In this document: positions 47,484 to 50,233 of the stretch, in pieces
Position numbering within the stretch: position 1 is the stretch's first letter
How the letters are laid out: the number at the start of each line of letters is the position of its first letter
NCBI RefSeq assembly: GCF_033153115.1
Contig: NW_026889779.1
Location: 10,850,001-10,914,000, forward strand
Direction: 5' to 3'
From: Saccostrea echinata
Taxonomy: Eukaryota
Length of the DNA: 64,000 nucleotides
Made by a program: the position numbers and the translations under genes
Notes under the pieces: generated by a model
The model's input: the letters and a program-made list of their open reading frames with translations, nothing else
Database searches by the model: none
Told to the model about the DNA's origin: nothing

Positions 47484-48519
47484 TTCTAAAATAATTAAAA
47501 TAAATGTCACCATTTAATCAAAATTTTACACCATCACCAGTCAGAATTATGGAGAATATCTTAATAATGTTTTGTTTCCTAGATCAGCAATTTTGTATAT
47601 TCTATTTTTGCAAATCCTTTGCTATTCCTCGCCATATGTTAAGTTAACCAATCCAACTTAACAGGGCTAGTACTATACAATAAGGCCTAACGTACAAGAT
47701 GATACAGAGGTTGCAACAGTTATATTTTCCTAAGCTAAAAATATTCACGCTTACTGTCAAATGGAATATCAACTTTAAAATCTTGAACCTTTCATCAGTA
47801 TACATGTACAGAAAATTGAAATAAGGTCCCTGTCCTGAACTTCAGTTTTTAATAATAATTTAGAGATTTCAAAGAAAGCTTCTACTTTTAATTAAAAGGA
47901 AGCACATGGATCCAACTATTACTAAATTTTATCGAGTGAACCTGCAAGTAACCTTTCAGATCTACATTACATGTTTACCTACAAACATTCAGAGCAGCAC
48001 ATTTTACTAAAGCTTTGGAAACACCCAAAGCAGCATATTATGCTTAAATTACGTACTTTGGTAAAAGAATAAAGTATTGAATGAACATCACAGTCAATTC
48101 TATTTAATGATAAATGGCTTTTTCGTAGTTTATATGCATATGGCAAATTTTAAGTAGGCCTACCCAAACTTCACTAGGGTCTATTTTCTCATCTTTCAGG
48201 TTTATAAAATTTTACCTCGAGTTGGCTTATTTGGTATGTCAATACTTCAACTCAAACATGCTTTTTTTTTCTTTAATATATTTTCAATTTACAGCTGAGA
48301 AAATGCCGGCAAAATGCCGGTAGTAACATGTTTGTTATCTCGTTACATTATTTACATATATCTATTGAAATGTATCTAAATGTTTGACTACTTACTGTCT
48401 GTTTTAATTAAGGTTCGTTCTTTGTTCGGTTTCTTCCAAACTTCTTATATCTTTTCCACCTGTCAAATAAAATGCCGAATGCTTACACGCGTGTAGTTTC
48501 TTCTTACAGCACTACCAGT

Positions 48520-48538
48520 CGTGTCGAAATTTCATTGG
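48520..48538 (-). promoter_or_regulatory. ERSE-like element of the BiP promoter
   Basis: Minus strand CCAAT-GAAATTTCG-ACACG, one mismatch to CCAAT-N9-CCACG; second CCAATGAAATT about 30 bp upstream. Confidence 0.65.
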
Positions 48539-48645
48539 CTAGCGTAATATTCACTCTGTAATTTCATTGGATACACTTAACATACTCCCATTCATATCTC
48601 AAGGACACGTATAACTTCGACAAACTACGTAAATCAGGAATATCG

Positions 48646-48670
48646 AGAATTGCCGAGAACAATCGAGAAT
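48646..48670. promoter_or_regulatory. Step-type heat shock element candidate
   Basis: GAA at 48647, 48657, 48667 (10-bp period): aGAAttgccgaGAAcaatcgaGAAt. Confidence 0.45.
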
Positions 48671-50233
48671 TTAAAATTTCATCAGCAAAAACTATTTACA
48701 TATATACTCGAAGTATCATTCCCCAGTGTTATTATGTAATTATTATAGCTTATCTAATTTTATTCCATATTAAAATTTGTCTTTTACTTTCTCAATGTGT
48801 TGTACATTGATTATTTCGTATTCGCTTACTAAACTTTCTAAGAAAAGCATACTGTATGATAAGTTAGATTATGACAATAAAATATTTTGCAATGCATTCA
48901 TTAAGAAAGATTTTTGTGCTTTCTGAAGTTAAAAAGAATTATATTCACACATTCATTCTAGTACGACTTATCTTATTCAAAGAGTTCCTGCGCATGCTTT
49001 TACACGAACACGTGCTTCAGCCGTGAGGTCTGTGGACTGAGGACGGCGCTTGCAGAGAATAATGCAACCTTAACTTCATCCTGGTGCGTATAACCGAAAA
49101 AAGTATTTTTCTTTATGTTGTTTAACATTGCAATATTTCAGTCGTTAAAATGATATCCTCGATTATAGGTTACAGTAACTTTAGAGTAGTAATGGATAAA
49201 AAATTCTTGAAAAATGTTAGATTTACACGGTTGAATAATACAGGTAGTATGTAGAACAGCTCCGCCCGGGACTTTAATTTCAACAATATATTATTCCCAA
49301 ATTCAAAAAAGGTATCTTTTTCGCCCAGTTAATTGTGTAATTTTCCCAATAGTCATTTCTCCCAAATATTAATGAAAATATAGTTGGATATTTGATAACT
49401 AAACTTGCCATTAATATTCCCCTGTATTGCAAAATAAAAATTTAGTTGGTACCAAAGACCAGAAACTCATTATATAAAGATTTTAAAGTATAATGGTTAT
49501 CCAAAAATTTCCCAAAAGGTCACCATTTTCCCAATCTTTAGGGCCCTGGCCCCATTCCCAAAAGTGGTGTGAGAGCCCTGCAGTATTTAGATTAATCAAG
49601 AGACTGTGTCAGGCCTGGTAAGGGTAATCTTCCAAATGTTGAATCTTATTAAGTCACTTTTAAAGTTGTCTGAAGAAAGATACTGGCATGTTTAGGCAAA
49701 CCTATAGACTGTCTGACACGCAGTCAACAAAGGACTAAAGTTGCCATCTTAGTAAAAAAAAAAATAATAATAATACTGCCATCCACTTTAGCACTTGTTT
49801 GTGTACTTTAACTTAAAATATTTATTTCATTGTCCTGTATGATTCACTACAGGGATGATTTTCTTAAATGCTGATGTGCTTTACAGTCTTTACAACATTT
49901 CATTGATTTGGAGGTTCATCTCTCCAAATTGACCTGAAAAGATTGAAAATGATGAGTTTCAAAATTAAGGAAATATTAGATATATGTTGGCCTGGGTTCA
50001 AGATCATAGAAGCTGGACTACCTGGTAGGTTAGATATCAAGTCGTATTGAATGAATTAACACTTTTTATGGCTAGGCTAGCATATCATCCAGGATTGTGT
50101 AACATCTACTTGGTTGTAATATCTTGAACACAGCCCTGGTTTATTTCAGGATATGACCATTGGAAACAGACTGCAGTATTCTTAAACTATATACAGTTTA
50201 AAGGGCAATAGCTTAAGTGAAAATACCTAAAGA

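What the first reader, a model, noticed from the sequence alone, without database searches (positions are those of the whole stretch)
48390..49090. snoRNA host shares a head-to-head promoter with BiP: possible UPR/heat coupling of rRNA processing
Seen: about 500 bp separate the presumed BiP 5' exon from the TOP-like start, and they contain an ERSE-like CCAAT-N9-ACACG, a second CCAAT, a 10-bp-phased GAA array and an NRF1-like TGCGCATG. Established: ERSE drives BiP induction through ATF6/NF-Y. Inference: ER or heat stress could co-induce (or inversely regulate) U14 and several methylation guides, linking ER folding load to ribosome biogenesis.
Basis: partly seen in the sequence, partly recalled or inferred. 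Interest (0 to 1): 0.8.

Follow-up and report, generated by a model that had tools for sequence, protein, structure and literature searches.

The report
BiP and snoRNA-host divergent promoter
In this bivalve genome the ER chaperone gene BiP and a non-coding gene that carries U14 and other snoRNAs in its introns start about 520 bp apart and point away from each other; the ER-stress element next to BiP looks real, but whether stress also drives the snoRNA gene could not be tested here.

Summary
Spliced transcript contigs from four public runs place BiP's non-coding first exon at 48396 to about 48478 (up to 48502) on the minus strand. They place exon 1 of the snoRNA host at 49006 or earlier, ending at 49083, on the plus strand. 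Nothing is transcribed between them, and the roughly 500-bp spacer is single copy in the genome.

All four motifs exist. The ERSE-like CCAAT-N9-ACACG is very likely functional. It is the only match with at most one mismatch in 64 kb. It sits about 42-60 nt before BiP's probable start. It is 17/19 identical to an element in the GRP94 promoter of the same genome. Calreticulin has a perfect ERSE, and ERO1 and probably calnexin have one-mismatch ones.

The GAA array is a non-random triple CGAGAA repeat, but it is not a canonical heat-shock element. GCGCATGC occurs once in 64 kb, directly at the host's start.

The spacer is bipartite: two CpG-richer modules flank 250 bp of AT-rich DNA. I read this as two adjacent core promoters, with the stress module belonging to BiP. 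Co-induction of the host is plausible (the CRELD2-ALG12 pair is a precedent) but untested. This is a new member of a known kind.

The parts
44817..45578 (-). BiP/HSPA5 last coding exon, ending in KDEL
   Evidence: ORF. Pfam HSP70 E 3.3e-77. Relatives at 94-98% identity, including a Pinctada imbricata protein and JGI entries named 'heat shock protein 5'.
46710..47189 (-). BiP coding exon in the nucleotide-binding domain
   Evidence: Pfam HSP70 E 8.3e-72, profile positions 13-170.
47343..47485 (-). BiP exon 2: ATG at 47483, signal peptide and start of the ATPase domain. The 3' limit is approximate.
   Evidence: Translation [22 protein letters not shown]...GIDLGTTYS. The splice joint ends at 47485.
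47486..48395 (-). BiP intron 1, 910 nt, within the 5' UTR
   Evidence: Joint 47485/48396 with CT..AC ends (GT..AG on the minus strand) in runs X2, X4 and X5.
48396..48502 (-). BiP exon 1, entirely 5' UTR. The deepest contig ends at 48478 and the longest at 48502.
   Evidence: tables 2, 5 and 8. X2's 2696-nt contig reaches 48502. X5 (depth 2246) covers 79 nt of the 48400-48599 bin.
48500..48508 (-). TATA-like TGTAAGAAG, 11 nt after the ERSE-like element and 30 nt before the end of the deepest contig
   Evidence: Inference from the sequence. It rests on analogy with GRP94, where TATAAGG lies 10 nt after the same element.
48520..48538 (-). ERSE variant CCAAT-GAAATTTCG-ACACG. The spacer holds GAAnnTTC.
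   Evidence: It is 17/19 identical to CCAATGAAAGTTCAACACG in the GRP94 promoter.
48566..48570 (-). Second CCAAT box, part of a 32-bp-spaced direct repeat AATTTCATTGG
   Evidence: repeat families D2/D3.
48606..48610 (-). ACGTG core within GGACACGT, a possible bZIP/XBP1-type site
   Evidence: A similar GGACACGTCC lies in the calreticulin 5' region. Its function is inferred only.
48644..48669 (+). Three CGAGAA units at exact 10-bp spacing. ATCGAGAATT occurs twice, 20 bp apart.
   Evidence: 0.01 expected. CGAGAA also occurs twice in the GRP94 promoter and in none of the other four ER-gene promoters examined.
48700..48949 (.). AT-rich, CpG-poor spacer between the two promoter modules
   Evidence: GC 0.20-0.28 and 3 CpG in 250 bp. 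No contigs lie on it. It is single copy in the genome.
48990..48997 (+). GCGCATGC palindrome (NRF1-like core), abutting the host's start
   Evidence: It is the only occurrence in 64 kb, against 0.21 expected. The same core lies beside the presumed starts of ERO1 and calnexin.
48997..49083 (+). snoRNA host exon 1. The contig starts at 49006. CTTTT at 48997 is a possible start, and CACGTG lies at 49009-49014.
   Evidence: Joint 49083/50394 (GT..AG) in X2 and X5. X5 covers 78 nt of the 49000-49199 bin. E-box.
49084..50393 (+). Host intron 1, holding the snR60/Z15-type box C/D snoRNA at 50231-50312, 81 nt before the 3' splice site
   Evidence: for the joint. Rfam RF00309, 57.9 bits against a gathering score of 41.
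50394..50463 (+). Host exon 2 (alternative donor at 50458), with stop codons in all three frames
   Evidence: for the joints. for the frames.
50739..50826 (+). U14 (SNORD14) copy 1, in host intron 2 (50464-52349)
   Evidence: Rfam RF00016, 64.3 bits. Joint 50463/52350.
52350..52417 (+). Host exon 3. Exon 4 starts at 52597.
   Evidence: Joints in X5.
52712..52799 (+). U14 copy 2
   Evidence: RF00016, 64.0 bits.
53243..53316 (+). SNORD79-like box C/D snoRNA, below the gathering score
   Evidence: RF00152, 41.4 bits against 47, E 3e-4.
53648..53738 (+). U14 copy 3
   Evidence: RF00016, 62.6 bits against 64.

Best explanation
This is a genuine divergent (head-to-head) gene pair whose roughly 500-bp spacer holds two separate core promoters, not one compact shared promoter.

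BiP side (about 48480-48670). It carries two NF-Y-type CCAAT boxes, an ERSE variant (CCAAT-N9-ACACG) about 42-60 nt before the probable main start, an ACGTG core and a triple CGAGAA array. This module most likely gives BiP its unfolded-protein-response induction through NF-Y plus an ATF6/XBP1-type bZIP factor. It may also contribute to heat induction.

Host side (about 48985-49015). A GCGCATGC palindrome abuts a short pyrimidine start, followed by a CACGTG box. This is a housekeeping or growth-type promoter. It drives a spliced, non-coding transcript whose introns release an snR60/SNORD80-type snoRNA, three U14 copies and SNORD79- and SNORD81-like snoRNAs.

Coupling. The stress module can in principle act on the host, because ERSE works in either orientation and over a few hundred bp. 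I expect that effect to be weak or absent compared with BiP.

Shown: the gene structures, the 5' ends, the motifs and their recurrence in other ER genes. Inferred: factor binding, stress induction and the degree of coupling.
For: - Splice joints and contig ends give the divergent 5' ends and an untranscribed gap. The gap is single copy.
- Of 7 ERSE matches with at most 1 mismatch in 122 kb of this genome, 6 lie within 300 bp upstream of the first exons of BiP, GRP94 (two), calreticulin (perfect), ERO1 and probably calnexin. Only 0.037 are expected there.
- The BiP and GRP94 elements share 17 of 19 bases, including the same ACACG half-site. Both lie 10-11 nt before a TATA or TATA-like box.
- NF-YA is encoded in the genome.
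- GC and CpG are bimodal across the spacer.
- GCGCATGC occurs only at the host's start within 64 kb.
- Host exon 2 has stop codons in all frames. The snoRNAs are intronic.
- In the mouse CRELD2-ALG12 pair, an ERSE in a gap of under 400 bp drives the proximal gene strongly and the distal one only slightly (PMC3091781).
Against: - No expression series was available, so independence of the two promoters is as unproven as coupling.
- Contigs cannot fix a start site to the base. One contig (X2) reaches 48502, only 18 nt from the ERSE variant.
- The half-site is ACACG, not the consensus CCACG.
- The host's +5 to +17 region holds ACACG and ACACGTG. This could be a second bZIP/XBP1-type site, which would favour coupling.
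- Host contigs were assembled in two runs only. One of these, X5, has the highest BiP depth, but the other, X2, has the lowest. X4 has high BiP depth and no host contig.
Confidence: 0.6

Rival explanations
1. The spacer is a truly shared stress-responsive bidirectional promoter. ER stress, and perhaps heat, induces the snoRNA host together with BiP. That would raise the supply of U14 and the methylation guides when folding load rises.
For: - The 5' ends are only about 500-530 bp apart with nothing transcribed between them.
- ERSE acts in either orientation, and both genes of the CRELD2-ALG12 pair are induced by ER stressors at the mRNA level (PMC3091781).
- A snoRNA host and its divergent coding partner can be co-expressed, as with Zfas1-Znfx1 (PMC7154078).
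- ACACG/ACACGTG motifs lie at the host's +5 to +17.
- Host contigs are present in X5, the run with the deepest BiP contig, which is weak evidence.
Against: - The ERSE module lies about 460-480 bp from the host's start, beyond a 250-bp AT-rich, CpG-poor spacer.
- The host has its own proximal motifs.
- X4 has BiP at depth 375 but no host contig, while X2 has BiP at 42 and does have a host contig.
- Mature snoRNAs are stable, so a transient rise in host transcription would change their level little (established knowledge).
- ER stress lowers rRNA synthesis in mammals (my own knowledge, not checked here), which makes extra U14 of doubtful use.
Confidence: 0.25
2. Inverse coupling. Strong stress-driven firing of the BiP promoter competes with or interferes with the nearby host promoter, so snoRNA host transcription falls when BiP is induced.
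For: The only support is the proximity of the two promoters and the general idea of promoter competition. X4 shows high BiP depth with no host contig, which is weak evidence.
Against: - Divergent transcription does not collide.
- Bidirectional pairs are usually positively correlated or uncorrelated (established knowledge; PMC7154078 for Zfas1-Znfx1).
- X5 has the highest BiP depth and also the best host contig.
Confidence: 0.05
3. The motif cluster is a chance product of AT-rich sequence and has no regulatory role. BiP is regulated from elsewhere.
For: - Each motif is short.
- The ERSE match has one mismatch, and 1.68 such matches are expected per 64 kb.
- There is no canonical HSE and no canonical TATA box.
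Against: - The ERSE match is the only one in the window, and it lies in the right place and orientation.
- There is a near-identical element in the GRP94 promoter, and ERSE-type elements lie in three further ER-gene promoters (Poisson P about 3e-12 for 6 hits in the promoter windows, though those windows were chosen partly after seeing the hits).
- The CGAGAA array has an expectation of 0.01.
Confidence: 0.05

Closest known systems
Mouse/human CRELD2-ALG12 bidirectional pair with a shared ERSE (PMC3091781)
   Same: Two head-to-head genes lie a few hundred bp apart. One ERSE sits close to the stress-inducible partner and far from the other gene.
   Different: - There the distal partner is a protein-coding ER glycosylation gene; here it is a non-coding snoRNA host.
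- The gap here is about 500-530 bp rather than under 400 bp.
- The half-site here is ACACG.
- No functional data exist here.
Zfas1-Znfx1 and other snoRNA-host lncRNAs with bidirectional promoters (PMC7154078)
   Same: A spliced, non-coding, multi-snoRNA host starts divergently from a protein-coding gene.
   Different: - The partner here is a stress-inducible ER chaperone.
- The snoRNA content differs: U14 in three copies plus SNORD79/80/81-like snoRNAs, rather than SNORD12 copies.
Mammalian GRP78/GRP94/calreticulin ERSE promoters (CCAAT-N9-CCACG, NF-Y plus ATF6/XBP1; PMC8301375)
   Same: - CCAAT box, exact 9-nt spacer and a bZIP half-site.
- Multiple CCAAT boxes.
- Position within about 100 nt of the start.
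- Recurrence across ER chaperone genes.
- Use in both orientations.
   Different: - BiP and GRP94 here use ACACG instead of CCACG.
- Their AT-rich spacer contains GAAnnTTC, whereas the mammalian spacer is GC-rich (my own recollection).
- Only one ERSE-type element is seen at BiP.
U14 in introns of vertebrate hsc70/HSPA8 (PMC7277114, citing Liu and Maxwell 1990)
   Same: U14 is physically tied to an Hsp70-family gene. This genome also has one U14 copy in the last intron of its cytosolic hsc70.
   Different: The three copies here lie outside BiP, in a separate divergent non-coding host. Any coupling would be through the promoter, not through a shared pre-mRNA.
GAS5-type 5'TOP snoRNA host genes
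   Same: - One box C/D snoRNA per intron.
- Short exons without a long reading frame.
- snoRNA set overlapping that of GAS5 (SNORD79-, 80- and 81-like).
- Pyrimidine-rich possible start.
   Different: - The start is not mapped to the base.
- The pyrimidine run is only C plus four T.
- U14 is not a GAS5 snoRNA.

Membership tests
[quoted passage not shown] | Two genes on opposite strands transcribed away from each other | tested here: met
   BiP joints have CT..AC ends (minus strand). Host joints have GT..AG ends (plus strand).
[quoted passage not shown] | 5' ends less than 1 kb apart with no other transcript between them | tested here: met
   BiP contigs end at 48478-48502 and the host contig starts at 49006. 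Depth is zero at 48600-48999 in four runs. There is no Rfam hit in the gap.
[quoted passage not shown] | Shared cis-elements acting on both genes, or correlated expression | not testable with these tools
ERSE (CCAAT-N9-CCACG) | CCAAT box with an exact 9-nt spacer | tested here: met
   CCAAT GAAATTTCG ACACG at 48538..48520.
ERSE (CCAAT-N9-CCACG) | CCACG half-site for ATF6/XBP1 | tested here: inconclusive
   The half-site is ACACG (4 of 5). The same variant occurs in the GRP94 promoter. Calreticulin, ERO1 and calnexin have CCACG.
ERSE (CCAAT-N9-CCACG) | Lies in the proximal promoter of ER chaperone genes and recurs among them | tested here: met
   Six of 7 genome hits lie within 300 bp upstream of first exons of 5 ER genes, against 0.037 expected.
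ERSE (CCAAT-N9-CCACG) | NF-Y is present in the organism | tested here: met
   There are Pfam CBFB_NFYA matches in the genome. ATF6 itself was not sought, because no specific family model exists for it.
ERSE (CCAAT-N9-CCACG) | Confers induction by ER stress; bound by ATF6 when NF-Y is present | not testable with these tools
   This needs reporter, EMSA/ChIP or stress RNA-seq experiments.
Heat-shock element (HSE) | At least three contiguous nGAAn units in alternating orientation | tested here: not met
   There is no GAAnnTTCnnGAA or TTCnnGAAnnTTC in 48380-49100 or in the 420-bp BiP promoter. Only a two-unit GAAATTTC lies inside the ERSE spacer.
Heat-shock element (HSE) | 'Step-type' variant: three nGAAn units in one orientation at 10-bp spacing | tested here: met
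   GAA-N7-GAA-N7-GAA at 48647-48669. Whether a metazoan HSF binds such arrays rests on my recollection only.
5'TOP snoRNA host gene (GAS5/UHG type) | snoRNAs lie in introns of a spliced transcript, one per intron | tested here: met
   Intron 1 holds the snR60/Z15-type snoRNA and intron 2 holds U14 copy 1. Later introns were only partly mapped.
5'TOP snoRNA host gene (GAS5/UHG type) | No long open reading frame in the spliced RNA | tested here: inconclusive
   Exon 2 has stop codons in all three frames, and the exon 1 ATG is followed by a stop after 3 codons. The joined transcript was not built, by instruction.
5'TOP snoRNA host gene (GAS5/UHG type) | Transcription starts at a C followed by 4-15 pyrimidines | tested here: inconclusive
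   CTTTT at 48997-49001 is followed by A. The contig starts at 49006. Contigs cannot show a start site.
NRF1 site (GCGCATGCGC) | 10-bp palindrome | tested here: inconclusive
   Only the 8-bp core GCGCATGC is present. The same core lies near the presumed ERO1 and calnexin starts, so it may be a general core-promoter element in this species.

The most novel reading that the evidence does not exclude
In this bivalve, U14 supply is wired to Hsp70-family promoters twice. One copy lies inside the last intron of cytosolic hsc70. Three copies lie in a non-coding host that fires from the ERSE-bearing BiP spacer. Both cytosolic and ER proteotoxic stress would then tune the capacity for 18S rRNA processing and for several rRNA methylations. 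The ERSE variant shared by BiP and GRP94, with GAAnnTTC in its spacer, would be a composite UPR/heat element.
Probability: 0.12. Interest if true: 0.7.

Novelty: new member of a known kind. Interest (0 to 1): 0.4.

Why it matters
If the host responds to the BiP stress module, this would be a simple, testable physical link between ER folding load and the supply of an essential 18S-processing snoRNA (U14) and several methylation guides. It would sit in an animal known for strong heat and air-exposure responses.

Even without that link, the work yields two useful results.
- It gives a transcript-supported map of a mollusc BiP promoter.
- It shows that the NF-Y/bZIP 'ERSE' grammar defined in mammals recurs across BiP, GRP94, calreticulin, ERO1 and probably calnexin in a bivalve. 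BiP and GRP94 share a lineage-specific ACACG variant.

That gives concrete elements for reporter assays and for annotating UPR targets in molluscs.

Tried and rejected
- The one metagenome scan returned 80 BiP loci at 54-81% identity, mostly cDNA-like or protist. None has a U14 box nearby, and only one has a loose ERSE 1.1 kb upstream. This is uninformative.
- Expression coupling could not be tested. The single look-up of sequencing runs and read-laying runs gave only Logan contigs, whose depth cannot rank genes.
- Shared 7-mers among the ER-gene promoters gave only AT-rich noise.
- A genome-wide search for GAGAA-N5-GAGAA-N5-GAGAA found 113 matches. Nearly all belong to an unrelated 10-bp periodic repeat (CTAGAGAACY). 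It therefore says nothing about the function of the BiP array.
- The ERSE-like hit at L086:3927 is inside a GRP94 intron and was discarded.
- MANF has CCAAT and CCACG 34 nt apart plus a TTGCATCA site, but no ERSE.
- The TATAAG at 48444 was rejected as a TATA box because it lies inside BiP exon 1.
Exons were handled one by one.
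Full report
**What is there**

The window is AT-rich eukaryotic DNA (GC 0.34). It comes from a 923-Mb assembly and lies at C30:10850001-10914000.

On the minus strand lies an Hsp70-family gene split into exons.
- Its last exon ORF (44817..45578) ends in KDEL.
- Two exons match Pfam HSP70 at E 3e-77 and 8e-72.
- The exon with the ATG reads [22 protein letters not shown]...GIDLGTTYS, a signal peptide followed by the ATPase start.
- The closest proteins in the large collection are 94-98% identical. They include a Pinctada imbricata protein and JGI entries named 'heat shock protein 5'.

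This is BiP/HSPA5 of a pearl-oyster-like bivalve.

On the plus strand, from about 49000, Rfam finds these snoRNAs:
- an snR60/Z15-type box C/D snoRNA at 50231-50312, 57.9 bits against a gathering score of 41
- three U14/SNORD14 copies at 50739, 52712 and 53648, scoring 64.3, 64.0 and 62.6 bits against 64
- a SNORD79-like RNA at 53243, below the gathering score
- a SNORD81-like RNA at 54982, below the gathering score

**Transcript evidence**

I laid the contigs of four of them on 47400-53399. The runs are labelled only 'RNA?'. The contigs skip introns with GT..AG ends, so they are cDNA.

BiP:
- The joint 47485/48396 skips 910 nt, with CT..AC ends on the plus strand. It is seen in X2, X4 and X5.
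- Exon 1 is therefore pure 5' UTR, and the ATG lies 2 nt into exon 2.
- Arithmetic on the 200-nt bins gives the contig ends. X5 (depth 2246) ends at 48478. X2's 2696-nt contig ends at 48502.

Host:
- The joint 49083/50394 is seen in X2 and X5. The joints 50463/52350 and 52417/52597 are seen in X5. All have GT..AG ends.
- X5 covers 78 nt of the 49000-49199 bin, so its contig starts at 49006.
- Intron 1 contains the snR60-type snoRNA, 81 nt before the 3' splice site. Intron 2 contains U14 copy 1.
- Host exon 2 has stop codons in all three frames, and the exon 1 ATG is closed after three codons.

No contig lies on 48600-48999 in any run, although BiP intron 1 is covered at low depth in X1 and X4. 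The gap is therefore untranscribed at this sensitivity. It is single copy in the genome.

**The motifs**

ERSE-like element:
- CCAATGAAATTTCGACACG lies at 48538..48520, in BiP's orientation.
- It is the only match to CCAAT-N9-CCACG with at most one mismatch in the 64-kb window. 1.68 are expected over the whole window, so a few thousandths are expected for that place and orientation.

Second CCAAT:
- It lies 32 bp upstream, as part of a direct repeat AATTTCATTGG.

GAA array:
- It is really three CGAGAA units at exact 10-bp spacing. CGAGAA-N4-CGAGAA has an expectation of 0.01.
- There is no canonical three-unit alternating HSE.
- The only GAAnnTTC pair sits inside the ERSE spacer.

GCGCATGC:
- It occurs once in 64 kb, at 48990-48997, directly before CTTTT (48997) and a CACGTG box at 49009.

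- The one at 48444 lies inside BiP exon 1, so it is not a TATA box.

**Is the ERSE variant real?**

I could not compare species, so I used co-regulated genes of the same genome as a footprint. I located classic UPR targets with Pfam models and fetched their upstream DNA.

| Gene | Element | Context |
|---|---|---|
| Calreticulin (two copies) | Perfect CCAATCAAAACCCACCACG | About 110 nt before the ATG of its signal-peptide exon, with two more CCAAT boxes, an ATATATTA box and CACGTGG |
| ERO1 (two copies) | CGAAT-N9-CCACG | Directly before an ATATATTA box, with CCACGTCA (a UPRE) and a CCAAT about 50-90 nt upstream, and its signal-peptide/CFCK exon about 300 nt downstream |
| Calnexin | CCAGT-N9-CCACG | About 85 nt before an ATGAAG\|GT exon, the weakest assignment |
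| GRP94 | CCAATGAAAGTTCAACACG, in reverse orientation | First exon found at L093:5698 (MRWKTFYLGLLCVFVLS; exon 2 reads ...DDIGKSRDASRTDDETVQR); the element lies 10 nt before a TATAAGG box |
| MANF | None | Has CCAAT, CCACG and TTGCATCA |

The GRP94 element is 17/19 identical to BiP's. It has the same ACACG half-site and a GAAnnTTC spacer.

In 122 kb of non-redundant DNA from this genome there are 7 matches with at most one mismatch. Six lie within 300 bp upstream of the first exons of five ER genes, where 0.037 are expected. The promoter windows were drawn partly after seeing the hits, so the P value is generous. The pattern is still clear.

NF-YA is encoded in the genome.

By analogy with GRP94, BiP's TGTAAGAAG (48508..48500), 11 nt after the element, is a degenerate TATA box. 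Thirty nt further on is 48478, exactly where the deepest contig ends. That puts the ERSE variant at about -42 to -60, the usual place. X2's extension to 48502 would then reflect minor upstream starts.

**Architecture and mechanism**

GC and CpG are bimodal across the spacer.
- 48450-48700 has 12 CpG. This is the BiP module.
- 48950-49100 has 9 CpG. This is the host module.
- The 250 bp between them have GC 0.20-0.28 and only 3 CpG.

I therefore read the spacer as two adjacent core promoters.

The BiP module has the grammar defined in mammals, in which NF-Y on CCAAT lets ATF6 bind the half-site 9 nt away, while XBP1s binds independently (PMC8301375).

CGAGAA also occurs twice in the GRP94 promoter and in none of the calreticulin, ERO1, calnexin or MANF promoters. 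It may therefore be a BiP/GRP94-specific site, possibly HSF-related. That is a guess.

The host module looks like a housekeeping or growth promoter. The same GCGCATGC core also lies next to the presumed ERO1 and calnexin starts, so it may be a general core element here.

**Coupling**

Nothing here measures coupling.

Points that make it possible:
- Both genes of the CRELD2-ALG12 pair rise under ER stress, and ERSE acts regardless of direction (PMC3091781).
- snoRNA hosts with bidirectional promoters can track their partner, as with Zfas1-Znfx1 (PMC7154078).

Points that make strong coupling unlikely:
- In CRELD2-ALG12 the distal promoter responded only slightly.
- The host start is about 460-480 bp from the ERSE.
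- Host contigs appear in X5 (BiP depth 2246) and X2 (42) but not in X4 (375). Contig depth is a poor measure, so this is weak.

My estimates are 0.6 for weak or no coupling, 0.25 for real co-induction and 0.05 for inverse regulation.

**Context**

The genome has exactly four U14 matches. Three are in this host, and one is in the last intron of a cytosolic hsc70 ending in EEVD. That echoes the vertebrate HSPA8 arrangement (PMC7277114). The hsc70 copy is the most divergent of the four. U14 is thus tied to two different Hsp70-family genes in one genome. This is suggestive, but it was noticed after the fact.

**Limits**

- The metagenome scan was uninformative.

**Verdict**

This is a new example of a known kind: an ERSE-bearing bidirectional pair, and a snoRNA host with a divergent coding partner. 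It has a well-supported mollusc ERSE variant as a by-product. Interest is 0.4.

Noticed in passing
L001:1501-1596 (G000:C1:32254926-32255021, minus strand): The genome's fourth U14 copy lies in the last intron of a cytosolic hsc70 gene (last exon ends PTIEEVD), on the same strand, as in vertebrate HSPA8. It is the most divergent of the four copies.
   Followed up: partly
L087:5740-5910 and L088 (calreticulin, two copies on C34): A perfect ERSE, CCAATCAAAACCCACCACG, lies in reverse orientation about 110 nt before the calreticulin ATG. It sits with two more CCAAT boxes, an ATATATTA box and CACGTGG.
   Followed up: partly
L093:5470-5700 (GRP94 promoter, G000:C29): GRP94 carries the same ACACG-type ERSE variant as BiP (17/19 identical), 10 nt before TATAAGG. 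It also has a CCAAT-N9-CCAAG element and two CGAGAA units.
   Followed up: partly
L091:740-900 and L092 (ERO1, two copies): A dense UPR-type cluster comprising CCACGTCA (a UPRE), ACGTG twice, CCAAT, CGAAT-N9-CCACG, ATATATTA and TGCGCATGG. It lies about 300 nt before the signal-peptide/CFCK exon.
   Followed up: partly
window 50458/52711: One low-depth contig (X2, depth 3) joins host exon 2 to an acceptor AG immediately before the first base of U14 copy 2, then runs on through the snoRNA and the intron. It may be a cryptic splice or a processing intermediate.
   Followed up: no
window 51000-52200: Host intron 2 is swollen by repeats, including an inverted pair (AGCCCTCTC...poly-T at 51020-51070 and its complement at 51740-51800). 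Many multi-copy contigs with loose ends lie on it, so it is transposon-derived. It pushes U14 copy 1 about 1.5 kb from its 3' splice site.
   Followed up: no
window 48462: An X1 contig diverges from the reference inside BiP's 5' UTR exon, with 31 loose letters that look like the reference plus an insertion of about 15 nt. This is probably an indel allele.
   Followed up: no
G000, many contigs (for example C1:13379769, C9:3254804): A dispersed repeat family has a 10-bp periodic core CTAGAGAACY. GAGAA-N5-GAGAA-N5-GAGAA matches 113 times, nearly all of this form.
   Followed up: no
G000: C34:3.55 Mb and 6.95 Mb; C24:1.19 Mb and C9:39.36 Mb; C8:12.04 Mb and C47:0.21 Mb: Calreticulin, ERO1 and NF-YA each appear twice with identical or near-identical match scores. 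These are either recent duplications or uncollapsed haplotypes in the assembly.
   Followed up: no
L094:7730-7800 (MANF promoter): A perfect C/EBP-ATF composite site, TTGCATCA, lies next to a CCAAT box about 160 nt before the MANF ATG. CCACG is present, but 34 nt from the CCAAT, so there is no ERSE.
   Followed up: no
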